Source: Macrostomum lignano
Lineage: Eukaryota
Assembly (NCBI GenBank): GCA_002269645.1
Contig: NIVC01004237.1
Span: 1 to 23,904 of the forward strand
Reading direction: 5' to 3'
Length of the DNA stretch: 23,904 bases
The number at the start of each line of letters is the position of its first letter. Position 1 is the first letter of the stretch. This document shows positions 1,235-23,434 of this stretch, in pieces. Made by a program: the position numbers and the translations under genes. The notes beneath the pieces were generated by a model that was not told the DNA's origin, did not search any database, and was given only the letters and a program-made list of their open reading frames with translations.

Positions 1235-1748
1235 TCGAGAGACACACTTCAGATTGCGACAGACACACTTCATGCTGTGGTAGACACACTTCATGCTGTG
1301 GTAGACACACTTCAGGCTGTGGTAGACACACTTCAGGCTGTGGTAGACACACTTCAGGCTGTGGTAGACACTTCAGGATATGGTAATCACACTTCAGGAT
1401 ATGGTAGACACACTTCAGGATATGGTAGACACACTTCAGGCTGTGGTAGACACACTTCAGGCTGTGGTAGACACACTTCAGGCTGTGGTAGACACACTTC
1501 AGGCTGTGGTAGACACACTTCAGGATATGGTAGACACACTTCAGGCTGTGGTAGACACACTTCAGGCTGTGGTAGACACACTTCAGGCTGTGGTAGACAC
1601 ACTTCAGGCTGTGGTAGACACTTCAGGCTGTGGTAGACACACTTCAGGCTGTGGTAGACACACTTCAGGCTGTGGTAGACACACTTCAGGCTGTGGTAGA
1701 CACACTTCAGGCTGTGGTAGACACACTTCAGGATATGGTAGACACACT
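1235..1748. repeat. 21-bp minisatellite (CTGTGGTAGACACACTTCAGG)n in G-alpha-like intron
   Basis: Over 20 near-identical tandem units; explains the AVVDTLQ / CLPQPEV ORFs. Confidence 0.95.
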
Positions 1749-1836
1749 TAAGACGTCGAGGTATTTGGAATTATTAGATGTTTAAGAAAGAAACTGTTTT
1801 AACGTGTGTCGTGTTGTACTAGAGTAAAAAACAAAC

Positions 1837-5573: not shown

Positions 5574-6004
5574 CTGTCTTAAATTTTCATTTAAAACCAA
5601 CCAAGTGTAAAAACTATTATTCACTTGTTTATATTTTTTCTAGAAAAATTGACAAGAACTTTTCCTGTTAGTCTGTTACAAAGCTGTCTGTTAAAAAATT
5701 GAAAATTATATTGTATCATTTAGCTTAATGTTATTATAGAGAATAAATAAACTTAAAACAATACTGTATGTTTTACGTACAGTTTTTACTTTAGAAAAAA
5801 TATCTTTGTCTCAGTAAGATATCGCTTAAATTCTAGGATTTCTCGTTCTGTGCAAACAGTTACAAAGTTCTTGTGGGCCGTATTAACGAAGGAGGGCAGT
5901 GCTAAACAAAAACTATTCACAACTTTTAAAAAGTTATTGAAATTCACTGTTATTTGATAATAATAGTTAGGATGCGTCTTCATCATCGGCCATGGTTTCC
6001 TCAC

Positions 6005-8539
6005 TTGACTGACAGCGGGTTTCTCTTAGTATTGGCCCTCTCGTTCGTCGGTCTCTGCCGATACTCCACCCCGATGCCGTCCACGACCGCCCGATTCTTG
6101 CGCGTCTCCGTCTGGCTCTCCTCGCCCAGAACCCGGCGACCCTCCTCGCTGACGACCTCCTGCGTGACCGTGAGAAGTTTCAGCATCTTATTAATCTTTA
6201 GAATTCTAGCCACCTCTTTGCAAGCTCTCGTGTCCATTGGCACCTGGCGTAAGAATAGCTTCTCAAGCTTGTTATTAATTTTCAGCGCTTCGGATAGAGA
6301 GAAGAAGCAGACATTGTCCAGGCGGATTCCGCTCAAATCCAGCAGGACAATGGTCCGATTGCTAGAGAATGCGGCGATGAAAGTGTTAAAGGCCATCGCA
6401 TCAATCTTGAGGTTAGCCAAGATCAGGCCTTCTAGACTCTTGCTCTCCATCAGCTTTCCGTTGAGATCCTGCGATGCCACTATGCTCATCTGGCAGCCAG
6501 AAAAGTCTAGAATGCGCAGGTTGTCCGCAAATTTAGTTGGCAAATTTTTTATTATGCTTCCAACCAGCGACATGTGGTGACAATTTTGAAATGCGAACGT
6601 TTCTAGTTTAGTCATGTTCGAGCAGGCTTCGCGCATGTTGTTTAGCATTTTTGGCGACAACTGGTCCAGCTTCTTTCCTGACTCGTCGATGCACTCAAGA
6701 TTCTTCAGATGAAAGCCGGTCTGATCGGGCTTCTTACGCCTGATTTCCATCTGGCCTGTAGAATTGGCGGGGTCCTCTGGCTCCGGACAGCACACGGTTT
6801 GAAGGAAGTCTGCCATTAGATCCTTCTCTGTCCAGTAGATGCGGAGCGTCTTGATGTGAACGTTCGTTTTCATTGCGGTAGCCAGACTTTTGTATGCCTC
6901 AAGCGTCTCTTTGGCTAGCAGATCTAGGCGCAAGTCCACCTCTTGGATGGTCGTGTGGTTAAACTTGATCATCTTGGACAGGCCTGTAAGCGACAATCTC
7001 GGAATGATGCCCTCGTGCTTCACGGTGAATCGCTCTGGCAGCGATTCAACAATTTTCTTGCCAAGATCTCTGCGGGCCATGTCCATGACCGCCACGCATT
7101 CCAGACTGAGCTGGTAGTCCATGATCTTGCCCTCGACCAGTTGACTGTCTTCTGGCGACGTAGCCGCTGGCATTTTCATGCGACTCGCTTTGCCTCGCCG
7201 TTTGTTATACTGCAGTATCTTTGCAAACAGTTCCCGGGTGGCCGGCGTGTCGTTGTCCGACTTGCGGATGCTGCAGTAGAACACAACAACATTGTAGGAG
7301 ATCGGAGTCATACTCATGTTCTGGAAGAAGCGGCTAGCTTCATCTGTTCCACTAGTGTCTAGATTTTTCGCGGCGAGATACTCTTGAATAAGACGATTGC
7401 CAAACATGTAGCGCTGGTTATCCTCTGCGGTGAGGTTTGTAGCCAGTTGAATCAGGCCGAACTTAGTCATCATGTGGTCCTCCTTGGCCAAAATGAAAGT
7501 TGCGCTGCCTTTCTTTATGGTGTCCATAGCGCGTTCGGACAGCATTGCGTAGGCGCGATTCGCTTCGAAGCGACTCTCCTTTTCGCGTTCGATCAGCTTC
7601 AACTTGATGCAGGAGACAAACTGTTCCACAATTGTTGTCGGAGAGTTCAGATCGATACTCATGCGCATGTCGGTCAGCAGGCAGAAGAACGAACAGTACA
7701 AAGGCACCTGTGAGTAATGTCGCAGGGACGCTATTTTGCTTTGATTTGAATTTTCACCGTTTGAATCCTGTTGTTGCTGCTGATCGTTTCCTTGACCCTT
7801 GCTAGAGCTGCGGCTTAGTTTTGTGCTGACTTTGTCCGTGTTTTCCCTCTCCAAAGGTCGCTCGTCTCTGGGCTTTGCCGAGGTCACAGATGTCGCCGAT
7901 TCTGACGACCCGCGTCGCCTCTGCGGCTCCTGCGACTTTTTCGCTGCATCCAGCAGCTTTTGAAGCTCAGTTGATTTTTTTGCCACTACTAGCTTGTTTA
8001 GAAACGAGGAAAAGTGTTCCCACGGCTTCTTAGCTAGTTTGACGTACTTCTGAACGTACTCCTCTGCCTGGGATTTGGCGAATCCGGTCAGAATTACCTT
8101 GCGCTGGTAGCGGTGCATCAGTCTGACTGTAAAGTTAGTCTGACTAAATACCAGAATGTGCAGTTCCGGCATGATGTTCTCAAATAGCAAACTCTTCATC
8201 TCATCATTTAGATTGTCTTCGTAGCCATCTATGATGAGCAGTGTGCTCGCCTGGTGCATGTTCATCACCTCCCAAATTTCGCGTTCGGCCAGCTTGCAGT
8301 CGCCTCCGAAAAGCTGTTCCATCATCATCACTTTCACTGTGGGCGCTGTTACTTTAAGATCAAGCAAGATTAGCAGTTGGAAAGGCCGTCCGAATACGTT
8401 TTCGTCCAAAGACCATTTGTAGGCCATATACTTAGCCAGCGTACTCTTCCCTGTTCCAGGGTCACCCTCAATAACTACTGTATGCGGGTCTTTTTCGCCT
8501 TCCTTATAATCAAAAACTTGGAAGGCGTTGACTGACTTT
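6005..8539 (-). CDS. NLR-like gene, NACHT-WHD-LRR exon
   Basis: Acceptor gcag|A at 8539. Walker A GDPGTGKS (8443-8466), Walker B LLIIDGYED, ILTGF, VPLYC, QEYLAA, then RI-type LRRs (LRILDFSGCQM, LEGLILANLKI, IVLLDLSGIRL, LEKLFLRQVPM). No frameshifts. If unspliced, it stops at 6001. Confidence 0.93.
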
Positions 8540-8616
8540 CTGCAATTTTAAATTGAGAAATCAAAGTTGAAAATTATGTCTTGCTTAATGATCTGATCTG
8601 TTTTCCTGCTACTTAC

Positions 8617-8758
8617 CCATTCAAATTGAGCAGCTGCTGTTGGCAGTAGAATTCGGCAATGTCTGTTTCAACTTTAGTGTACCATGGAATCGGATTCCAT
8701 TTGGCGTACGCGGTGGAGTACCGCTCTCGAAGAATGTTGTTACAGTAAGGTAGACCCT
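8617..8758 (-). CDS. NLR-like gene, pre-NACHT (FISNA-like) exon
   Basis: ttcag|AG...GG|gtaagt, phases 1 and 2 match both neighbours. Encodes GLPYCNNILRERYSTAYAKWNPIPWYTKVETDIAEFYCQQQLLNLNG, with the PxPW motif typical upstream of invertebrate NACHT domains. Confidence 0.88.
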
Positions 8759-8835
8759 CTGAAGAAACAGAAGAAACAGAAAAATCCTGTGATCAACTCT
8801 TAGAAGAGGATTTACTAATTATTATAAATACTTAC

Positions 8836-9970
8836 GTGGTTTATTAGCAAGGATGTCGGCCTTAGCGGCCTGGTAGTCCTGGTGCATCTGCTGGTACACC
8901 TGTTCGTTCTTGGGTTTCAGCGATTCAACGAACTCATCCAACACATTGCCAGATTTTGGCACTAGAAAGTCGATCAACGTCGACATCTGCTCGTTGTTGC
9001 GCAGAGTAGAAAATATTTCCGTGCTCTCGTCTTGGGTAATAATCTCCTTGTTCATCAGATGCTCAACCACTGTGTCCGCTTTTACATCGTTGAGCAGCTG
9101 TTCGTAGTACTTGTCGAGAATTAGGCGCTCCGCTAATACCATGCCAGTTTTGATATGAGCCCATCTCTGACAGCGCGACTTGTCGCTCATGTCCATCGTC
9201 GCCTTTCCAACAACCGACTGGCGTTTTTTCGTTTCCGACGTGTCCAAATCGCGCGTCTTGAGCCGTTTCTGCAGAATAGGAATCTCTTCGCGCTTCTTCT
9301 TTCGTTCTTGGTTTTCGATTTCTCTCTTCAACTGGCTGACCTCTTGGCGGTACCAGACGAGGAATTCGCCCAGAATGAAGCGCGATTCAGTCTCGTCCAT
9401 GCTAGTGTCCTGCTTGTATGCGTTCATACAGTCTGCTGCACCCGAGTGTCCCAGTCGCTGGAGCTGCTCGGCAATGCGGCTAAACAGTCTGTTAGCTGCG
9501 CTCGCCTTTAAGGTCTGCAGCGAGGCGAGCTCGCGTTGAATGCCCAGTAGGCGTTGCAGCGCTGCGCCCTGGCTGTCATCGCGAGGTTCCGGATCTCCCA
9601 TCCAGCCGTTTGGCTGCGGCTTCGTCACATCGCAGGTGTATTTTACTAACAGGAGCAGCAGACGCAGGTCGTAGTTGTCAGCGGACACGGAAGATTTCTC
9701 CTTCGGGTAGAGCGTCTGCCAGTCGTCTTCGGTTAGCATGTCTTTGATCTTAAGTCGCCTCAGCGTCCGGTGAATGTCCGGCGAGGCCAAGTGTTCCGTT
9801 AGCTCGTCCGTTGGATGCTTGGAATCGAATAGGCTTCTCAAGCACGCCTTGCCCTCTCGCATGAGAAAGTGGCACACCTGGATAGGTTCTCTACGCTCCT
9901 CTCGTCGGTCATGTCCAACTGCAGCTTGGGCGTGTTGTCTACCACGCCGAACTGAAATTTTGGATGTCAT
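8836..9970 (-). CDS. NLR-like gene, HEPN(DZIP3-like), coiled coil and CARD-like exon
   Basis: Donor C|GTAAGT at 8835. LRSLFDSKHP...WQTLYP...YDLRLLLLLVKYTC...NGW..P...D resembles DZIP3-type HEPN. LDKYYEQLLNDVKADTVVEHLMNKEIIT...LIDFL...DEFVESL resembles a CARD. The exon may begin at the acceptor at 9951 rather than the ATG at 9970. Confidence 0.88.
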
Positions 9971-11337: not shown

Positions 11338-11434
11338 GTTCACTTTGCTGGCTTTGCATTTTATTAGGAAACTCCGGCTTCTATTCAATCCTTGCTGCCA
11401 TTGCCCTGTCAGACTGTGTGTATCCTCCCCTCCC

Positions 11435-12012
11435 CTCTACCTGTTTATGTCTCCCCTCTACCTGTCTGTGTCGCCACTCTACCTGTCTGTGTCTCCCCTC
11501 TACCTGTCTGTGTCTTCCCTCTACTGTCTGTGTCTTCCCTCTACCTGTCTGTCTTCCCTCTACCTGTCTGTGTCTCCCCTCTACCTGTCTGTGTCGCCAT
11601 CTACCTGTCTGTGTCTCCCCTCTACCTGTCTGTGTCTCCCCTCTACCTGCCTGTGTCTCCCCTCTACCTGTCTGTCTTCACTCTACCTGTCTGTGTCGCC
11701 ACTCTACCTGTCTGTGTCTCCCCTCTACCTGTCTGTGTCTCCCCTTTACCTGTCTGTGTCTCCCCTCTACCTGTCTTTGTCTCCCCTCTACCTGTCTGTG
11801 TCTCCCCTCTACCTGTCTGTGTCTCCCCTCTACCTGTCTGTGTCTCCCCTCTACCTGTCTGTGTCTCCCCTCTACCTGTCTGTGTCTCCCCTCTACCTGT
11901 CTGTGTCTCCCCTCTACCTGTCTGTGTCTCCCCTCTACCTGTCTGTGTCTCCCCTCTACCTGTCTGTGTCTCCCCTCTACCTGTCTGTGTCTCCCCTCTA
12001 CCTGTCTGTGTC
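11435..12012. repeat. 21-bp minisatellite (CTCTACCTGTCTGTGTCTCCC)n in BRCA2 intron
   Basis: Tandem units, diverged at the left and homogeneous at the right; explains the PLYLSVS / LPSTCLC ORFs. Confidence 0.95.
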
Positions 12013-12138
12013 TGGCCGTCTGACAATTGTCTCGCCAGCATTTTTCTCTGCCTATACTATTTACCACTTGCTACTGTTGGTCAGTAGTTTATAAGCAGCG
12101 TGTGATCATTTGACGCATTAATTAGTTTCCCGATTTAG

Positions 12139-12597
12139 GTGACCCTCACGGACGGCTGGTACTGCATCGGCGCACAGCTGGATCCCCTGCTGTGCCGCGC
12201 AGCCTCCGCCGGCCTCATCAAACCGGGCACCCGGCTGCTCACCTGCCAGGCTGAACTGATTGGCTGCTCTGAGGCCTGCCAGCCGCTGGAAGCGCCGGCC
12301 AGCGCCGCTCTCCGTCTCCATGGCAACAGCACCCGACGCTGCGTTGCCAACCGAAGAGTCCGGCTGGGCTTCGCCGACGCCTCGCCGATGCCGGTGTCGC
12401 TCAGCTCACTGCGGCCCGACGGCGGCAAGGCTGGCGCTCTGCACCTGTTCGTCAGCCGGCGGTACCCCCGGCAGTTCATGGAGCGCAGCCCTGGCAGCGA
12501 CGCCAGGGTGTTCCGCGGGGCTCGAGCCGAGGACCGACGGGCCAGGGAGTTCGAGGCTGAGGCCCGCCGGCGAATGGAGGAAGCTGTGGAGGACCAG
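12139..12597 (+). CDS. BRCA2: BRCA2 exon (OB1 and start of OB2/Tower)
   Basis: tttag|GTG...CAG|gttggt. VTLTDGWYCIGAQLDPLL...AELIGCSEACQPLEAPASAALRLHGNSTRR...SLRPDGG...RRYPRQFME matches human ELTDGWYAVKAQLDPPL...[29 protein letters not shown]...SLFSDGG...RAYPIQWME. Confidence 0.95.
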
Positions 12598-12611
12598 GTT
12601 GGTGGCTGCTT

Positions 12612-13056
12612 CCAGTTGCTGGGCCGCCAGCCTCCCAGATCCCCAGTTGCTGGACCAGACTCCCAGATCCCCAGTTGCTGGACCAGACTCCCAGATCCCC
12701 AGTTGCTGGCCAGACTCCCAGATCCCCAGTTGCTGGGCCGCCAGCCTCCCAGATCCCCAGTTGCTGGACCAGCCTCCCAGATCCTCAGTTGCTGGGCCGC
12801 CAGCCTCCCAGATCCTCAGTTTGCTGGACCAGACTCCCAGATCCCCAGTTGCTGGGCCAGACTCCCAGATCCCCAGTTGCTGGGCCAGACTCCCAGATCC
12901 CCAGTTGCTGGGCCAGACTCCCAGATCCCCAGATCCCCAGTTGCTGGGCCAGCCAGCCTCCCAGATCCCCAGTTGCTTGGCCAGACTCCCAGATCCCCAG
13001 TTGCTGGGCCAGACTCCCAGATCCTCAGTTGCTGGGCCGCCAGCCTCCCAGATCCC
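12612..13056 (+). repeat. ~28-bp composite minisatellite (CCAGTTGCTGGGCCAGCCTCCCAGATCC-like) filling a BRCA2 intron
   Basis: Tandem variants between the donor at 12598 and the acceptor at 13077; same family as 23022-23425. Confidence 0.93.
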
Positions 13057-13077
13057 AACACCGCATCCCAATTTCAG

Positions 13078-13461
13078 CTGGGCTCCAAGCCCCCGCAGCA
13101 GCGCGGCCGTCTCTACCAGCCTGATGAAGTGTCCCAGCTGAGCACCGGCGAGGAGCTTCAGGCCGCCCTGCGCTCCGCCCTGAACGCGGACGAACTGCAG
13201 GCCTGGCTGACGGAGCGTCAGCGAGACGTCCTGACTCGGCACCGGGAGCAGCTGCTGCCGCCGCTCGTCCAGCAGCGTCAGGTGACGCCGCTGGTTCGCC
13301 TGCTGGTCATCGGCACCGAGGACGCCGACTTGGACGAAGGCGCCGTGGCCACCCTGACTGTGTGGAACCCGGAGGAGGGCGCCGAGTCCTGGCTGCGCGA
13401 GGGCTGCGGCCTGCTGGTGCTCGGGGCGAATGTGGGATCCGCTGCTTCCGGCGGGCATCGG
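13078..13461 (+). CDS. BRCA2: BRCA2 exon (three-helix bundle and OB2)
   Basis: tttcag|CTG...CGG|gtgcga. VSQLSTGEELQAALRSALNADELQAWLTERQRDVLTRHREQL and RQVTPLVRLLV...LTVWNP...LREG match human LQDGAELYEAV...EEQLRALNNHRQML and RDVTTVWKLRIV...LSIWRP...LTEG. Confidence 0.88.
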
Positions 13462-13497
13462 GTGCGATTTTGTCGGGTGGGGGGGGGGGTTGGTTGC

Positions 13498-14030
13498 TAG
13501 GAAATCGCTCATAGGGTCATCGTGTTTTTAGGAAATCGCTCATAGGGTCATCGTGTTTTTAGGAAATCGCTCATAGGGTCATCGTGTTTTTAGGAAATCG
13601 CTCATAGGGTCATCGTGTTTTTAGGAAATCGCTCATAGGGTCATCGTGTTTTTAGGAAATCGCTCATAGGGTCATCGTGTTTTTAGGAAATCGCTCATAG
13701 GGTCATCGTGTTTTTAGGAAATCGCTCATAGGGTCATCGTGTTTTTAGGAAATCGCTCATAGGGTCATCGTGTTTTTAGGAAATCGCTCATAGGGTCATC
13801 GTGTTTTTAGGAAATCGCTCATAGGGTCATCGTGTTTTTAGGAAATCGCTCATAGTGTCATGGTTTTATAATGAAATCCCTCATAGGGTCATGATGTTAT
13901 AAAGGAATCGCTCATAGGGTCATGGTGTTATAAGAGAATCGCTCATAGGGTCATGGTGTTATAAGAGAATCGCTCATAGGGTCATGGTGTTATAAGAGAA
14001 TCGGTCATAGGGCCATGGTGTTATAAGGGA
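13498..14030. repeat. 31-bp minisatellite (GAAATCGCTCATAGGGTCATCGTGTTTTTAG)n in BRCA2 intron
   Basis: About 11-12 near-perfect copies to ~13860, then diverged ~32-bp copies. Confidence 0.95.
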
Positions 14031-15849: not shown

Positions 15850-16780
15850 AGTTTATGACAGTTTGTTAAAAGAATTGTTTATGGAAGTGCTTAAAGATTC
15901 TTATAAGAGTTTATGACAGGTTGCTTAAACAGTTTATGACAGGTTTGTTAAACAGTTTATGACAGGTTGGTTAAACAGTTTATGACAGGTTGTTTAAACA
16001 GTTTATGACAGGTTGGTTAAACAGTTTATGACAGGTTGGTTAAACAGTTTATGGGAGGTTGGTTAAACAGTCTATGAGAGGTTGGTTAAACAGTTTATGA
16101 GTTTGTTCAAACAGTTTATGAGACTGGTTAAACAGTTTATGGGAGGTTGGTTAAACAGTTTATGGAGGTTGGTTAAACAGTTTATGGAGGTTGGTTAAAC
16201 AGTCTATGAGAGGTTGGTTAAACAGTTTATGAGTTTGTTCAAACAGTTTATGAGACTGGTTAAACAGTTTATGACAGGTTGTTAAACAGTTTATGAGACT
16301 GGTTAAACAGTTTATGACAGGTTGGTTAAACAGTTTATGGGAGGTTGGTTAAACAGTTTATGGGAGGTTGGTTAAACAGTTATGAGAGGTTGGTTAAACA
16401 GTTTATGAGTTTTTTCAAACAGTTTATGAGACTGGTTAAACAGTTTATGACAGGTTGGTTAAACAGTTTATGGGAGGTTGGTTAAACAGTTTATGGGAGG
16501 TTGGTTAAACAGTCTATGAGAGGTTGGTTAAACAGTTTATGAGTTTGTTCAAACAGTTTATGAGACTGGTTAAACAGTTTATGACAGGTTGGTTAAACAG
16601 TTTATGGGAGGTTGGTTAAACAGTTTATGGGAGGTTGGTTAAACAGTCTATGAGAGGTTGGTTAAACAGTTTATGAGTTTGTTCAAACAGTTTATGGGAC
16701 TGGTTAAACAGTTTATGACAGGTTGGTTAAACAGTTTATGAGAGGTTGGTTCAATAGTTTTTTAGAGGTAGGTTAATTAT
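15850..16780. repeat. 20-23-bp satellite (TAAACAGTTTATGRSAGGTTGGT) with higher-order structure
   Basis: Monomer variants ATGACAGG, ATGGGAGG, CTATGAGAGG, ATGAGTTTGTTC and ATGAGACTGG recur in a fixed order. Confidence 0.93.
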
Positions 16781-17399
16781 TTTATGTAGGTATATTTAAA
16801 CAGTTTATGGGTGGCTTAAGAGTATATAGTTTTTGGAGGACTATGAAACTGTTTATTTGAAAGTTGTGAGAGGTCATTAAACAGTTTATAGAGAATCCCA
16901 TGAGTCTTGAGTGGAAGATGCATTCAACAGATTAAACAGGACTTTTCAAACAAAGATCATTATAGATATCGTTCAAGGCGCGGAAGAGCATCAGGTCCCA
17001 AACGTTGAAATTGAGGTTTTCAAGAGTTTTTTTTCAATTTTTTCTGGTCTTCTTTTGTTGCTCGGCATCTTACCACCAGCTTGTAGCCTCTCATTTTTTC
17101 AATTTCTTTAAAGCCTTTTTCTGCTTTGCATTTCCAATTGCATTGATTTTCTGTCAGTTCGTTGCATGTCTTTATTATTTATCTTCGGTACCGACCTTGC
17201 CGCTGTACTCGCACACAGCATGGCAGGTGCTGTTCAGCTTTTTAATATTTCTTGCATAAGTACGAAAGTTTTGCATGCGTAACACCCCAAATAAAAACTT
17301 TTTGTGAATTCAAACCGAAAGCCATCTGTTTTTTTCTAATGTCTGTTCTTTTTAAAACGCAGCTCTCTTTTGCTCGCTCTGTGACTTATTTCGCCTGAA

Positions 17400-17419
17400 G
17401 ACAGACAGACAGACAGATT

Positions 17420-17451
<32 letters not shown>

Positions 17452-17462
17452 CACACACACAC

Positions 17463-17501
<39 letters not shown>

Positions 17502-17613
17502 CACAGACAGACAGACAGACAGACAGACACACAGACAGACAGACAGACAGGCAGACAGACACACACACAGACACACACAGACAGACAGACAGACAAACAG
17601 AGACAGGCAGACA

Positions 17614-17651
<38 letters not shown>

Positions 17652-17804
17652 GACAGACAAACAGAGACAGGCAGACAGACACACACACACACACAGACAG
17701 ACAAACAGAGACAGGCACACACACACAGACAGACAGACAGACAGGCAGACAGACACACACACACAGACAGACAGACACACACACAGACAGACAGACAGAC
17801 ACAC

Positions 17805-17841
<37 letters not shown>

Positions 17842-17894
17842 CACACACACAGACAGACAGACACACACACAGACAGACAGACAGACAGACACAC

Positions 17895-17943
<49 letters not shown>

Positions 17944-17968
17944 CACAGACAAACAGACAGACACACAC

Positions 17969-18001
<33 letters not shown>

Positions 18002-18126
18002 TAGAGACAGACAGGCAGGCAGACAGGCAGGCAGACACACAGACAGACAGACAGACAGACACACAGACAGACAGACAGACAGACACACACACAGACAGAC
18101 AGACAGACAGACAGACACACACACAC

Positions 18127-18157
<31 letters not shown>

Positions 18158-18210
18158 CACACACACAGACAGACAGACACACACACAGACAGACAGACAG
18201 ACAGACACAC

Positions 18211-18259
<49 letters not shown>

Positions 18260-18284
18260 CACAGACAAACAGACAGACACACAC

Positions 18285-18321
<37 letters not shown>

Positions 18322-18442
18322 TAGAGACAGACAGGCAGGCAGACAGGCAGGCAGACACACAGACAGACAGACAGACAGACACACAGACAGACAGACAGAC
18401 AGACACACACACAGACAGACAGACAGACAGACACACACACAC

Positions 18443-18481
<39 letters not shown>

Positions 18482-18550
18482 CACACACACACAGACACAC
18501 ACACACACACAGACAGACAGACAGACACACAGACAGACAGGCAGGCAGAC
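17400..18550. repeat. Compound (CAGA)n/(CA)n microsatellite, ~1.15 kb
   Basis: Directly visible; explains the CLSV / DRQT ORFs. Confidence 0.97.
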
Positions 18551-19469
18551 AGTGCAAATACAAAAACCTGAAGACACAAGCCTACCTGAAGCTGTTATTA
18601 TACATCGAACCTGCGGTATGCTGTGGATATTGACAGCAGGTATAACATATGCCTGCCGCATTCCCTACGGCAGTTTGGCAGCAGCGGCAGCAACTTAAAG
18701 AAATGATAATTAAAGACTTCAGAAAGATTGGGTGCGACTCCAATTACTCATAGTAGTGCCGAAGGGTTTATAAAGCTGAATTATATTATATTATCAGACA
18801 GTGCAGCGCGCAGTTACAGAAAATGAGATGGACGAGAAAACAGATAGCTAAAAAAAGTGACACAAATCAATCAATCAATTAACCTAAAAATGAAGAAACA
18901 AACTCAGTTTATGTACAACAGTGCATGTAACACACGCAAATTAAACAGACATATATGACCTGCAACTATGGCACACAGCAATAAATCATAAATAATGATA
19001 TTCAATCACTCAATCGAACCCGTCGAGGAAACCCAAGCAACCAATATGAAGTATCAAAATTTGTACTTTGAAAATGAATTATTTATGAGCTAGGCTGCCT
19101 TAAGCCCTGGCCTGGTCGGGGTGCACATTTACACAAATATATATCGAATTAATTTAACTGGGCACAGATTAACTACTTAGTTAGTAGTTTTCCAATTTTG
19201 ACGCGTATTAAACAACGTGTTGAAAAATCACAATGCCCAGTTAAAATTAATTGGCAAAAGAAGTAAAAGTAAAAAAGCAGCTAAAAACAGCGATTCGTTA
19301 CGGGCAATTAAATAAAATAAGTATAGTTGCTGATGCTGACTGACTGTGATGGAGTTAATCCAATTTGATTCACGTTTTTTAAACTAGCAAACAATTTTAA
19401 ACCTATAATTGACAGGTTGACAGGTAACTTGAGGTTGAGTGATTAGTTAAGAGAGACGTTCTGAAGGTG

Positions 19470-19920
19470 GATTACACTAATTATGATGGGGATTATTGGG
19501 ACACCAATTATGATGGGGATTATTGGGACACCAATTATGATGGGGATTATTGGGACACCAATTATGATGGGGATTATTGGGACACCAATTATGATGGGGA
19601 TTATTGGGACACCAATTATGATGGGGATTATTGGGACACCAATTATGATGGGGATTATTGGGACACCAATTATGATGGGGATTATTGGGACACCAATTAT
19701 GATGGGGATTATTGGGACACCAATTATGATGGGATTATTGGGACACCAATTATGATGGGGACTTTTTGGGACACTAATTATGATGGAGATTATTGGGACA
19801 CTAATTACGGAGGGGATTATTGGGACACTAATTACGGAGGGGATTATTGGGACACTAATTACGGAGGGGATTATTGGGACACTAACTACGGAGGGGATTA
19901 TTCGGAGGCCAATTATGGTT
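19470..19920 (+). repeat. 27-bp tandem repeat (GGGACACCAATTATGATGGGGATTATT)n, possibly coding (DTNYDGDYW)n
   Basis: About 16 units; ORF 19467-19934 spans the array. Confidence 0.9.
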
Positions 19921-21080: not shown

Positions 21081-22190
21081 GGAGAATCTTATGGGGAATT
21101 GGAGATAATCTTATGGGGAGTTTGGGAAGAATCATGAGGGGGATGGAGGAGAATCTTATGGGGAGTTTGGGAAGAATCATGAGGAGGATGGGGAGAATCT
21201 TATGGGGAGTTTGGGAAGAATCATGAGAAGGATGGGGGAGAATCTTATGGGGAGTTTGGGAAGAATTATGAGGGGGATGGAGGAGAATCTTATGGGGAGT
21301 TTGGGAAGAATCATGAGGGGGTGGGAGAGAATCTTATGGGGAATTTGGGAAGAATCATGAGGAGGATGGGGAGAATCTTATGGGGAGTTTGGGAAGAATC
21401 ATGAGGGAGTGGGGGAGAATCTTATGGGAGTTGGGGAAGAATCATGAGGGGATGGAGGAGAATCTTATGGGGAGTTGGGGAAGAATCATGAAGGGGATGG
21501 GGAGAATCTTATGGGGAGTTGGGGAAGAATCATGAAGGGGATGGGGAGAATCTTATGGGGAGTTTGGGAAGAATCATGAGGGAGTGGGGGAGAATCTTAT
21601 GGGGAGTTGGGGAAGAATCATGAAGGGGATGGGGGAGAATCTTATGGGGAGTTGGGGAAGAATCATGAAGGGGATGGGGAGAATCTTATGGGGAGTTGGG
21701 GAAGAATCATGAAGGGATGGGGGAGAATCTTATGGGGAGTTGGGGAAGAATCATGAGGGGATGGGGGAGAATCTTATGGGGAGTTTGGGAAGAATCATGA
21801 GGAGGATGGGGGAGAATCTTATGGGGAGTTGGGGAAGAATCATGAGGAGGATGGGGGAGAATCTTATGGGGAGTTTGGGAAGAATCATGAGGAGGATGGG
21901 GGAGAATCTTATGGGAGTTGGGGAAGAATTATGAGGGGGGTGGGGGAGAATCTTATGGGGAGTTTGGGAAGAATCATGAGGAGGATGGGGAGAATCTTAT
22001 GGGAGTTGGGGAAGAATCATGAGGGGGATGGAGGAGAATCTTATGGGGAGTTGGGGAAGAATCATGAGGGGATGGGGGAGAATCTTATGGGAGTTGGGGA
22101 AGAATCATGAGGGGATGGGGGAAATCTTATGGGGAGTTGGGGAAGAATCATGAAGGAGGTGGGGGAGAATCATAAAGGGAGTTGGGAAAG
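21081..22190. repeat. ~44-bp purine-rich minisatellite (GGGGAGAATCTTATGGGGAGTTTGGGAAGAATCATGAGGGGATG)n
   Basis: Over 20 tandem units of 43-45 bp, each with several G-runs. Confidence 0.95.
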
Positions 22191-22790
22191 AAACTTCAGA
22201 ACTGTGGGAGATTCTTAAAAATTAGGAAATAATCTTATCGGGCATTGGGTGCTGAGGATAATTGTTCGCTATACATACTAGAAACGCAAAAAAATAAACG
22301 AGACAAGAAAAAAATTTTAGAAGATATTTTAATGTTCACAGGGACAATGAGTGCTAAGGACAATAAGAAGAATTGTAGAAATTATTTTGAAATTTTATTC
22401 AGACAAAATCGTTTTACAGTTGCATACTTAACATCCAATATACATTGCTTACACCCGTTTACAACAAAAAATAGTGCAAATGACGGTAGAGAACTTCTTA
22501 AACATGCTTTATCAATTTTGCATAATAGAAGTTAAAGAAGCAACTGTACAACAATTTTTGTTAGAAAGTATATATTGTTTATATTAACGTGTCACTGGTA
22601 TTAAAACTTTTAATAATCAATAAATATTTAAAATAATACACGCTAAATAGAGATATTGTGCTTAAGTTTGAATCATAAATATTGATGAAATAGATTTTCT
22701 GCTTAAAAATTTTACTTACGAAAGTATGATTAATGAAGTATCCCATATACAAGCTATTATAATTATAACTAAACATTTTCTAATAGAAAT

Positions 22791-23021: not shown

Positions 23022-23425
23022 CTAGCAACTGGGGATCTGGGAGGCTGGCCCAGCAACTGGGGATCTGGAGGCTGGCCCAGCAACTGGGGATCTGGGAGGC
23101 TGGCCCAGCAACTGGGGATCTGGGAGGCTGGCCCAGAAACTGGGATCTGGGAGGCTGGCCCAGCAACTGGGATCTGGGAGGCTGGCCCAGCAAACTGGGA
23201 TCTGGGAGGCTGGCCCAGCAACTGGGATCTGGAGGCTGGCCCAGCAACTGGGATCTGGGGGCTGGTAGCCCAGCAACTGAGGATCTGGGAGGCTGGCCCA
23301 GCAACTGGGGATCTGGGAGGCTGGCCCAGCAAATGAGGAACTGGGAGGCTGGCCTAGCAACTGGGGATCTGGAGGCTGGTGGCCCAGCAACTGGGGATCT
23401 GGAGGCTGGTGTCCCAGCAACTGAG
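23022..23425 (-). repeat. ~28-bp composite minisatellite filling an IAP intron (same family as 12612-13056)
   Basis: Reverse complement units CCAGTTGCTGGGCCAGCCTCCCAGATCC, inside intron 22988-23434. Confidence 0.93.
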
Positions 23426-23434
23426 GACAATCAC

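What the first reader, a model, noticed from the sequence alone, without database searches (positions are those of the whole stretch)
9401..9883. HEPN-like domain lacks the catalytic R-x4-6-H motif
Seen: where DZIP3-type HEPNs have RIxxxRNxxxxH, this protein has RLLGIQRELASL (QRELASL at 9518-9538). My alignment puts Gln at the Arg position and Leu at the His position, while flanking motifs (LYP, YDLRLL, NGW..P, RLG) are kept. Known: HEPN RNase activity needs this Arg and His in a dimer. Inference: a pseudo-nuclease retained for dimerisation, RNA or nucleotide sensing, or dominant-negative regulation of active HEPN-NLR paralogs.
Basis: partly seen in the sequence, partly recalled or inferred. 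Interest (0 to 1): 0.7.

Follow-up and report, generated by a model that had tools for sequence, protein, structure and literature searches.

The report
Inactive HEPN domain in flatworm NLR
A flatworm (Macrostomum lignano) innate-immune-type receptor gene carries an N-terminal HEPN domain that has lost the residues an RNA-cutting HEPN needs; the same loss is shared by its counterparts in molluscs, annelids, brachiopods and nemerteans, so it is an old, conserved non-cutting version of a known domain, not a one-off oddity.

Summary
On the minus strand, 9389-9805 encodes a DZIP3/hRUL138-type HEPN domain (Pfam E 1.1e-18). At the family's R-N-x3-4-H site this protein reads Q-R-E-L-A-S-L (9518-9538). 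The flanking family motifs are kept.

The gene is intact and has the architecture HEPN-CARD-NACHT-LRR. It is one copy of the annotated Macrostomum lignano gene Mlig026612.

The loss is neither rare nor recent:
- Of 151 aligned domains from the 150 best relatives, only 76 have both Arg and His.
- Seven full-length proteins with the same architecture, from a brachiopod, two annelids, three molluscs and a nemertean, all lack the His.
- In that group the HEPN domain is the best-conserved part of the protein.
- A second family-typical Arg-Asn pair is also gone.
- The only other Rx6H string is a family-wide structural feature.

Most likely this is a catalytically dead HEPN kept as a binding or oligomerisation module, with CARD as the signalling output. 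Which non-catalytic role it plays is untested, and the dominant-negative idea has no support.

HEPN-NLR fusions and motif-less members of this family are already described, so this is a new member of a known kind, of modest interest.

The parts
9389..9805 (-). DZIP3/hRUL138-type HEPN domain (Pfam stretch). The family alignment extends it to about 9374-9877.
   Evidence: Pfam PF18738, E 1.1e-18, 67.8 bits, profile positions 3-140 of 144. Family alignment covers query residues 1-168. AlphaFold2 model has mean pLDDT 92.7 and is all-helical.
9518..9538 (-). QRELASL, the degenerate equivalent of the family's R-N-x3-4-H site. Gln is at the Arg column, Arg at the Asn column and Leu at the His column.
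   Evidence: Column counts. MAFFT check. In the model this lies at the end of helix 103-119 and the start of loop 120-124. That matches where PMC3710099 places the Rx4-6H motif.
9551..9553 (-). It is nearly invariant in the family whatever the motif state.
   Evidence: Arg in 146 of 152 domains. About 95% in both the canonical set and the degenerate clade.
9638..9643 (-). Lys-Tyr at the place of a second family-typical Arg-Asn pair (LLRNIC), which is also lost.
   Evidence: Canonical R+H domains have R 84% and N 76% here. The His-less clade has R 20% and N 22%. The query has K and Y.
9815..9838 (-). RSLFDSKH, the only Rx4-6H string inside the domain. It is a family-wide feature at the end of helix 1 and is not a replacement active site.
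   Evidence: Regex. The His column is replaced by Y, F, I or C in many canonical and degenerate members. The Arg and His occur together in 29 of 75 canonical domains as well.
8879..9118 (-). CARD domain.
   Evidence: Pfam PF00619, E 3.2e-09, 37.1 bits against a cut-off of 23.9.
8836..9877 (-). Coding exon carrying HEPN and CARD. The start codon of the matching annotated model (MREGK...) is at 9860-9862.
   Evidence: Splice donor GTAAGT at 8835. The spliced translation is identical to P0151 from MREGK onward.
8617..8758 (-). Short linker exon between two 77-nt GT..AG introns (8759-8835 and 8540-8616).
   Evidence: The translation matches P0001 across both junctions.
6001..8539 (-). Exon with NACHT (about 8038-8484; Walker A GDPGTGKST at 8440-8466; Walker B LLIIDGYED), helical domains and a C-terminal leucine-rich-repeat region, up to the stop codon.
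   Evidence: Pfam NACHT E 4.7e-15 on the full protein. Walker motifs aligned with the related proteins. LRR periodicity is visible in the translation. The related proteins hit LRR_6.
9879..9879 (-). One G fewer (GG instead of GGG) than in two other copies of the gene. This shifts the frame of the 43-residue N-terminal extension annotated there. It lies upstream of the HEPN domain.
   Evidence: Three-way DNA alignment. Models P0151 (Mlig026612g4/g5) start at MREGK, as this copy must.

Best explanation
The region encodes the N-terminal domain of an intact NLR-type receptor (HEPN-CARD-NACHT-LRR) of the flatworm Macrostomum lignano. The domain is a true member of the DZIP3/hRUL138 HEPN family, but its predicted RNase site has been dismantled.

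Shown:
- The catalytic-position Arg, the Asn after it and the His are replaced by Gln, Arg and Leu.
- A second Arg-Asn pair that accompanies the motif in canonical members is replaced by Lys-Tyr.
- The His is absent from every same-architecture protein found in brachiopod, annelid, mollusc and nemertean genomes.
- In those proteins the HEPN domain is the most conserved domain.

Inferred:
- The His was lost once, before these spiralian phyla diverged.
- With catalysis gone, the Arg then drifted in some lineages, including this one.
- The fold has been kept by selection for a non-catalytic job.

Most likely mechanism (inferred): ligand sensing through the LRRs and nucleotide-dependent NACHT oligomerisation cluster the N-terminal HEPN-CARD units. 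CARD carries the downstream signal. The dead HEPN acts as a self-association or ligand/partner-binding module that controls or assists that clustering, and it does not cut RNA.
For: Domain identity and site:
- Pfam HEPN_DZIP3 E 1.1e-18, CARD, NACHT.
- Q/R/L at the R/N/H columns in an HMMER alignment of 161 domains. MAFFT agrees on R and N and shows no His nearby.
- The AlphaFold2 model (pLDDT 92.7, pTM 0.85) puts the site at the end of helix 103-119 and the start of the loop to helix 125-141. [quoted passage not shown]

Whole-site decay:
- The LLRN pair is R 84% / N 76% in canonical domains, about 20% in the His-less clade, and K-Y here.

The gene is alive:
- GT..AG introns in phase, 1240 codons open, identical to annotated P0151 and P0155.
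- 9 synonymous against 1 non-synonymous difference to another copy.
- Walker A and B are intact.

Old and conserved:
- Lingula, Owenia, Lottia, Mizuhopecten, Haliotis, Tubulanus and Capitella proteins share the HEPN_DZIP3-CARD-NACHT layout.
- They are also the best matches of this protein's NACHT-LRR region (E 1e-48 to 1e-21). Three of them are the only matches of its CARD region.
- None of them has the His.
- Their mean pairwise identity is 41% in HEPN, 35% in CARD and 27% in NACHT.
- In the wider 'PYPNGW' clade of 41 domains, 38 have the motif region aligned; 36 of those lack a full motif.

Precedent:
- The 2013 HEPN survey lists the motif as only 'mostly conserved' in this family and predicts that motif-less HEPNs bind rather than cut.
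Against: - No biochemical data exist for any DZIP3-type HEPN, so 'inactive' is relative to a predicted site.
- An Arg sits one residue after the lost Arg and could conceivably reach the same pocket.
- An Rx6H string (RSLFDSKH) lies at the end of helix 1. That may be at the same end of the bundle as the site, and I could not obtain model coordinates to measure distances.
- Foldseek found no significant PDB neighbour (best E 1.2), so the HEPN fold assignment rests on Pfam and on secondary-structure topology.
- In a neighbour-joining tree the flatworm domain sits on a long branch next to, not inside, the His-less clade. It also lacks that clade's signature Tyr and His (KPQPNGW, and D in place of CH).
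- Orthology therefore rests on shared architecture and on best hits in all three regions.
- The non-catalytic role itself (self-association or ligand binding) is pure inference.
Confidence: 0.62

Rival explanations
1. The domain is still an RNase that uses non-canonical residues. Candidates are the Arg shifted by one position (R146 of the ORF) with another general acid/base, or the helix-1 R45-x6-H52 pair.
For: Arg is present at the Asn column. An Rx6H string exists at 9815-9838. PMC3710099 notes that some HEPN families use alternative histidines, such as AbiV and AF0298-like. The strong conservation of the domain fits any function, including catalysis.
Against: The helix-1 His column is freely replaced by Y, F, I or C in canonical and degenerate members alike, which is the behaviour of a packing residue. 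The pair is not specific to motif-less proteins. The shifted Arg is not conserved among the same-architecture proteins, which have Q, R, K or A there. There is no His within 24 residues after the site. The second Arg-Asn pair is also lost.
Confidence: 0.12
2. The protein is a dominant-negative or decoy partner that heterodimerises with catalytically active HEPN-NLR paralogues and restrains them.
For: Canonical and His-less family members can coexist in one genome. Lingula anatina has both the His-less P0009 and a canonical HEPN-NACHT protein, P0145. HEPN active sites are generally composite across a dimer (established knowledge of HEPN RNases).
Against: The protein has its own full sensor and signalling set (CARD, NACHT with intact Walker motifs, LRR), so it is not a truncated decoy. 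The lineage has kept one architecture across the phyla sampled. All M. lignano copies in the 90%-identity cluster carry the same dead site. Apart from its own cluster, the best relative scores only E 4e-25 at 30% identity. No active M. lignano paralogue was seen, but the genome could not be searched directly.
Confidence: 0.07
3. The domain is a decaying relic in a dying or dead gene copy, and the missing motif is simply erosion.
For: This copy has a 1-nt deletion at 9879 that disrupts the N-terminal extension annotated in two other copies. The M. lignano family includes truncated models P0152 and P0153. The flatworm domain scores lower against Pfam (67.8 bits) than the related proteins do (88-138 bits).
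Against: The reading frame from MREGK to the stop is open across three exons with canonical splice sites. Copies differ 9:1 synonymous to non-synonymous. The 570 nt of HEPN are identical in three copies. The same His-less state is conserved across phyla, with HEPN the best-conserved domain. Structural family columns are intact. The model is confident.
Confidence: 0.04
4. The motif only seems absent because the alignment is wrong.
For: HMMER and MAFFT differ on whether Leu or a gap faces the His column.
Against: The segment is gap-free between two strong anchors: the near-invariant Arg five residues upstream, and the F/W and RLG columns downstream. Both methods agree on the Arg and Asn columns. 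No His exists anywhere in the 60 residues around the site except H144 in RLGH.
Confidence: 0.02

Closest known systems
DZIP3/hRUL138-like HEPN family (Pfam PF18738; Anantharaman et al. 2013, PMC3710099)
   Same: Significant profile match over almost the whole model. All structural family motifs are present. The fusion to CARD, NACHT and LRR is one of the architectures listed for the family. The family's motif is described as only 'mostly conserved'.
   Different: The Arg, Asn and His of the predicted site are replaced, and so is a second Arg-Asn pair. The domain is a divergent, long-branch member.
HEPN-NACHT NLR expansions of cnidarians and other invertebrates (PMC8260672; PMC8662601)
   Same: N-terminal DZIP3-type HEPN on a NACHT receptor. 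A role as RNA sensor or RNase has been proposed but never tested.
   Different: The cnidarian, hemichordate and Lingula members sampled here carry the intact R-N-x3-4-H motif and match only the NACHT core of this protein (E 1e-16 or weaker). This protein belongs with a CARD-containing, His-less set of spiralian proteins.
Same-architecture spiralian NLRs annotated 'NLR family CARD domain-containing protein 3/4-like' (Lingula XP_013410021, Mizuhopecten XP_021374729, Haliotis XP_071116058, Lottia XP_009051454, Capitella ELT89336, Owenia CAH1778043, Tubulanus XP_074650995)
   Same: HEPN_DZIP3-CARD-NACHT order at the same positions. All seven are the best matches of this protein's NACHT-LRR region and among the best of its HEPN; three of them match its CARD. 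All lack the His.
   Different: Only 24-30% identity to the flatworm protein. Three of them keep the Arg. They share a PYPNGW/CH signature that the flatworm protein has only in part. The flatworm protein has an extra low-complexity insert after NACHT.
Motif-less HEPN domains predicted or known to act without cutting (MtlR and Swt1 in PMC3710099)
   Same: HEPN fold retained without the Rx4-6H residues. They are interpreted as binding or regulatory modules.
   Different: They belong to different HEPN families and different biological contexts. No binding partner is known here.
Vertebrate DZIP3 itself (shark Heptranchias perlo XP_067827061)
   Same: Same Pfam family. Its HEPN also lacks the His (LRLLYLRKRLVTR).
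   Different: It is an internal domain of a RING E3 ligase, not the N-terminus of an NLR. It keeps the Arg.

Membership tests
DZIP3/hRUL138-like HEPN (PF18738) | Profile match above Pfam's gathering score | tested here: met
   67.8 bits against 27, E 1.1e-18, profile positions 3-140 of 144.
DZIP3/hRUL138-like HEPN (PF18738) | Family structural motifs: LYP, (F/Y)D..LL..LL, C, P..GW...P, D.S..A...R, RLG | tested here: met
   The query carries the majority residue, or a conservative one, in these columns of a 161-domain alignment.
DZIP3/hRUL138-like HEPN (PF18738) | R-N-x3-4-H motif (the family's version of Rx4-6H) | tested here: not met
   Q, R and L (or a gap) occupy the R, N and H columns. This feature is not universal in the family: 76 of 151 sampled domains have it.
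HEPN superfamily fold | [quoted passage not shown] | tested here: met
   The AlphaFold2 model (pLDDT 92.7) has helix 103-119, loop 120-124 and helix 125-141, with the site at residues 114-120. This matches the description in PMC3710099.
HEPN superfamily fold | Structural similarity to a solved HEPN structure | tested here: inconclusive
   Foldseek against PDB: best E 1.2, no HEPN entries. Sequence and profile searches of PDB found nothing relevant.
Catalytically active HEPN RNase | Arg and His of Rx4-6H, plus a polar residue after the Arg | tested here: not met
   All three are replaced. The only other Rx4-6H string behaves as a structural feature.
Catalytically active HEPN RNase | Metal-independent RNA cleavage | not testable with these tools
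   Needs an assay on recombinant protein.
NLR (NACHT-LRR receptor) | NACHT NTPase with Walker A and Walker B | tested here: met
   PF05729, E 4.7e-15 on the spliced protein. GDPGTGKST and LLIIDGYED align with the related proteins.
NLR (NACHT-LRR receptor) | C-terminal leucine-rich repeats | tested here: inconclusive
   No Pfam LRR hit on the flatworm protein. The repeat pattern is visible in the translation. The region aligns with related proteins, two of which hit LRR_6.
CARD | Profile match above the gathering score | tested here: met
   37.1 bits against 23.9.
Spiralian His-less HEPN-CARD-NACHT-LRR lineage | Same domain order, with best matches in all three regions | tested here: met
   (architecture). 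(HEPN hits). (NACHT-LRR: the seven proteins are the best hits; CARD: three of them are the only hits).
Spiralian His-less HEPN-CARD-NACHT-LRR lineage | [quoted passage not shown] | tested here: inconclusive
   The neighbour-joining tree puts the flatworm domain on a long branch beside the clade. It has KPQPNGW, and D in place of the clade's His.

The most novel reading that the evidence does not exclude
The His-less HEPN of this old spiralian CARD-NLR lineage has been converted from an RNA-cutting effector into a dedicated ligand-binding (RNA or nucleotide) or partner-binding sensor or regulator domain. That would explain why it is the most conserved domain of the receptor. It would be the first animal NLR in which a pseudo-RNase supplies recognition or gating while CARD supplies output.
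Probability: 0.2. Interest if true: 0.6.

Novelty: new member of a known kind. Interest (0 to 1): 0.3.

Why it matters
HEPN-NLR fusions are among the commonest non-canonical NLRs of invertebrates, and they are routinely described as nucleases without any test.

In this sample half of the closest family members lack a full catalytic motif. A whole CARD-containing lineage spanning several spiralian phyla keeps a motif-less HEPN under stronger constraint than its NACHT domain. Domain counts therefore cannot be read as RNase effector counts.

The work also identifies a tractable case. It is a conserved gene in the laboratory flatworm M. lignano, where a non-catalytic HEPN function could be studied. 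For this window the result is mainly a correct annotation, not a new kind of system.

Tried and rejected
- The word-indexed protein search found nothing, either with the single domain or with a 54-sequence alignment. The exhaustive HMMER search was needed to find relatives.
- PDB sequence and profile searches gave only chance hits: Tic56 at E 0.12 and STI1 at E 0.76.
- Foldseek of a confident model against PDB gave no match better than E 1.2. The fold could therefore not be confirmed independently, and I did not run the viral structure library.
- Model coordinates are not exposed, so I could not measure how close R45/H52 lie to the site, nor build a dimer.
- I considered the helix-1 Rx6H string as an alternative site and rejected it on its substitution pattern.
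- I considered that the gene is a pseudogene because of the 1-nt deletion at 9879. I rejected this because the deletion lies upstream of the HEPN domain, annotated models of other copies start at the next Met, and the rest of the frame is open with a 9:1 synonymous excess.
- Within-species dN/dS for the HEPN exon is uninformative, because the 570 nt are identical in three copies.
- A survey of M. lignano paralogues beyond the 90%-identity cluster was not possible.
- The paper on lophotrochozoan NLR families (Zhu et al. 2022, Gene 843:146807), cited in PMC12849515, is not held.

Full report
**What is at the coordinates**

The feature lies on the minus strand. ORF 8822..9970 translates to a protein with a Pfam HEPN_DZIP3 match at aa 56-194 (nt 9389-9805). 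The match has E 1.1e-18 and 67.8 bits against a gathering score of 27. A CARD follows at aa 285-364. The next long minus-strand ORF (6001..8427) carries the distal part of a NACHT domain and a leucine-rich C-terminus.

Reading the DNA between the two ORFs shows two 77-nt GT..AG introns (8759-8835 and 8540-8616) and a short linker exon (8617-8758). Joining the three exons gives 1240 open codons, with Walker A GDPGTGKST at 8440-8466. The gene is therefore HEPN-CARD-NACHT-LRR and intact.

**Origin**

An exhaustive HMMER search with the HEPN segment found 323 relatives. The best, P0001, has E 2e-121 and 99% identity. P0001 is 'hypothetical protein BOX15_Mlig026612g2/g3 [Macrostomum lignano]', PAA48443.1. 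Two contigs of assembly GCA_002269645.1 carry it and are about 99.2% identical to the window over the gene.

From Met-37 (MREGK) on, the window's spliced translation is identical to P0151 (Mlig026612g4/g5) and P0155. Against the L001 copy the coding sequence differs at 9 synonymous sites and 1 non-synonymous site. This is a live gene present in several near-identical copies.

The window lacks one G at 9879 that both other contigs have. That shifts the frame of a 43-residue N-terminal extension annotated for P0001. It lies upstream of the HEPN domain and corresponds to the shorter P0151-type model.

**Checking the observation**

I aligned the 161 HEPN domains of the 150 listed hits by iterated HMMER. 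The query's Q (9536-9538) is in a column that is Arg in 113 of 151 domains. Its R is in the Asn column (89 of 151). Its L (9518-9520) is in the main His column (60 of 149, with 28 more one column earlier). The Arg five residues upstream (9551-9553) is kept, and it is Arg in 146 of 152. An independent MAFFT alignment agrees for the Arg and Asn columns and places a gap opposite the His. Either way no His follows for 24 residues.

The observation and its coordinates are therefore confirmed.

**Is it unusual?**

It is not. Of the 151 domains aligned at the site, 76 have Arg and His, 37 have Arg only, 12 have His only and 26 have neither. The sample leans towards the query's relatives, so the family-wide share of intact motifs is probably higher. 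The 2013 HEPN survey already scores the motif in this family as 'mostly conserved', lists CARD, NACHT and LRR fusions, and predicts that motif-less HEPNs are binding domains. Even a shark DZIP3 orthologue lacks the His.

**The clade**

The best-scoring hits share a PYPNGW signature. This clade has 41 domains. At the site, 23 have Arg only, 13 have neither residue, 3 are not aligned there, 1 has both residues and 1 has His only.

Seven full-length members are named proteins: Lingula anatina (brachiopod), Owenia fusiformis and Capitella teleta (annelids), Lottia gigantea, Haliotis and Mizuhopecten yessoensis (molluscs), and Tubulanus polymorphus (nemertean).
- All have HEPN_DZIP3, CARD and NACHT at matching positions.
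- All seven are the best matches of the flatworm protein's NACHT-LRR region (E 1e-48 to 1e-21). Three of them (Tubulanus, Lingula, Owenia) are the only matches of its CARD.
- The canonical HEPN-NLRs match only the NACHT core, at E 1e-16 or weaker. The named ones come from cnidarians, hemichordates and one Lingula paralogue.
- None of the seven has the His. Three keep the Arg.

Across these proteins the HEPN domain is the most conserved region. Mean pairwise identity is 41% for HEPN, 35% for CARD and 27% for NACHT. For the flatworm protein against the others, the HEPN and NACHT figures are 30% and 24%.

The simplest reading is one old loss of the His in a CARD-containing NLR lineage. The now unconstrained Arg then drifted, while the fold stayed under strong constraint.

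There is a caveat. In a neighbour-joining tree the flatworm domain is a long branch beside the clade, and it has only part of the signature (KPQPNGW, and Asp for the clade's His). Its membership therefore rests mainly on architecture and on the best matches in the three regions.

**Is the site really dead?**

Four lines of evidence agree:
- All three motif residues are replaced.
- A second Arg-Asn pair (LLRNIC) is R 84% / N 76% in domains with the full motif and about 20% in the His-less clade. It is Lys-Tyr here (9638-9643). The pocket as a whole has been released from constraint.
- The AlphaFold2 model built on 54 sequences is confident (mean pLDDT 92.7, pTM 0.85). It places residues 114-120 at the end of a long helix (103-119) and the start of the loop to the next helix (125-141). 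This is where the HEPN literature puts Rx4-6H, so the replaced residues occupy the canonical place.
- The only other Rx4-6H string in the domain, RSLFDSKH at 9815-9838, is a family-wide feature. Its His column is exchanged for Tyr, Phe, Ile or Cys in canonical and degenerate members alike. That is the behaviour of a packing residue.

Some doubts remain. No DZIP3-type HEPN has been assayed or solved as far as I could find. Foldseek found no PDB neighbour. I could not inspect coordinates.

**Mechanism**

Shown:
- An intact NLR with Walker A and B motifs, a CARD and a dismantled HEPN site.
- Strong conservation of the HEPN domain.

Inferred:
- Activation through the LRR and NACHT domains clusters the N-terminal HEPN-CARD units.
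- CARD carries the output.
- The HEPN acts non-catalytically, as a self-association module or a ligand/partner-binding module.

I put about 0.6 on this reading. The rivals are residual non-canonical RNase activity (about 0.12), a dominant-negative partner of active paralogues (about 0.07), a decaying relic (about 0.04) and an alignment artefact (about 0.02). The dominant-negative idea would need an active HEPN-NLR in M. lignano. I could not search that genome. All copies in the 90%-identity cluster have the same dead site. Lingula shows that both kinds can coexist in one genome.

**Comparison with what is known, and novelty**

The domain is a member of PF18738 on profile score and structural motifs. 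It fails the catalytic-motif feature, as do many members of the family. HEPN-NLRs are known from cnidarians and from 'nine invertebrate taxa', with only speculative function.

Two points may be new as far as I could check. One is that a CARD-containing, His-less lineage spans several spiralian phyla. The other is that it keeps the HEPN as its best-conserved domain. The one dedicated paper on lophotrochozoan NLRs could not be read.

I file this as a new member of a known kind and give it an interest of about 0.3.

Noticed in passing
window 9879 and 9959: Compared with two other copies of the gene (L001, L002), the window lacks one G at 9879. This is a frameshift of the annotated 43-residue N-terminal extension. 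It also lacks 'AT' at 9959, inside what those models treat as the 5' intron. Annotated models Mlig026612g4/g5 (P0151) start at MREGK, as this copy would.
   Followed up: partly
window 12139-13500 (+): The neighbouring ORF matches BRCA2 OB1 (E 2.9e-20) and weakly matches the Tower domain. It runs through a 28-bp tandem array (12612-13056) that is in frame in the mechanical ORF. A similar 28-bp array lies at 23024-23427, apparently in reverse-complement orientation (it aligns to L001 in the opposite orientation).
   Followed up: no
window 1240-1749, 11430-12013, 13498-14022, 15908-16809, 17399-18552, 19474-19917, 21093-22192: The window is dense in minisatellites, with periods of 21, 21, 31, 23, 4 (AGAC, about 295 copies), 27 and 44 bp. 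They account for most of the long mechanical ORFs and the extreme skews outside the NLR gene. Copy numbers appear to differ between the window and the other assembly's contigs, judging by staggered BLAST matches.
   Followed up: no
window about 7700-8000 (-), protein residues about 606-700 of P0001: A low-complexity Ser/Gln/Arg-rich insert (…QEPQRRRGSSESATS…QQQQQDSNGENSNQSK…) follows the NACHT core. It has almost no counterpart in the related proteins of other phyla (19 aligned columns).
   Followed up: no
related proteins P0116 and P0145/P0009: A shark DZIP3 orthologue (the family's namesake) lacks the motif His. Lingula anatina encodes both a canonical R+H HEPN-NACHT protein and the His-less CARD-containing protein.
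   Followed up: partly
M. lignano cluster members P0152, P0153, P0154: Other annotated copies include a model without the HEPN domain (1013 aa), a HEPN-only model ending in a shifted frame (224 aa), and a 1292-aa copy with six substitutions and a read-through of the stop. This suggests copy-to-copy variation or assembly and annotation differences in this polyploid-like genome.
   Followed up: no
The word-indexed protein search returned no hit at E <= 0.001, either for the domain or for a 54-sequence alignment of it. The exhaustive search found 323 relatives, including a 99% identical protein.
   Followed up: no
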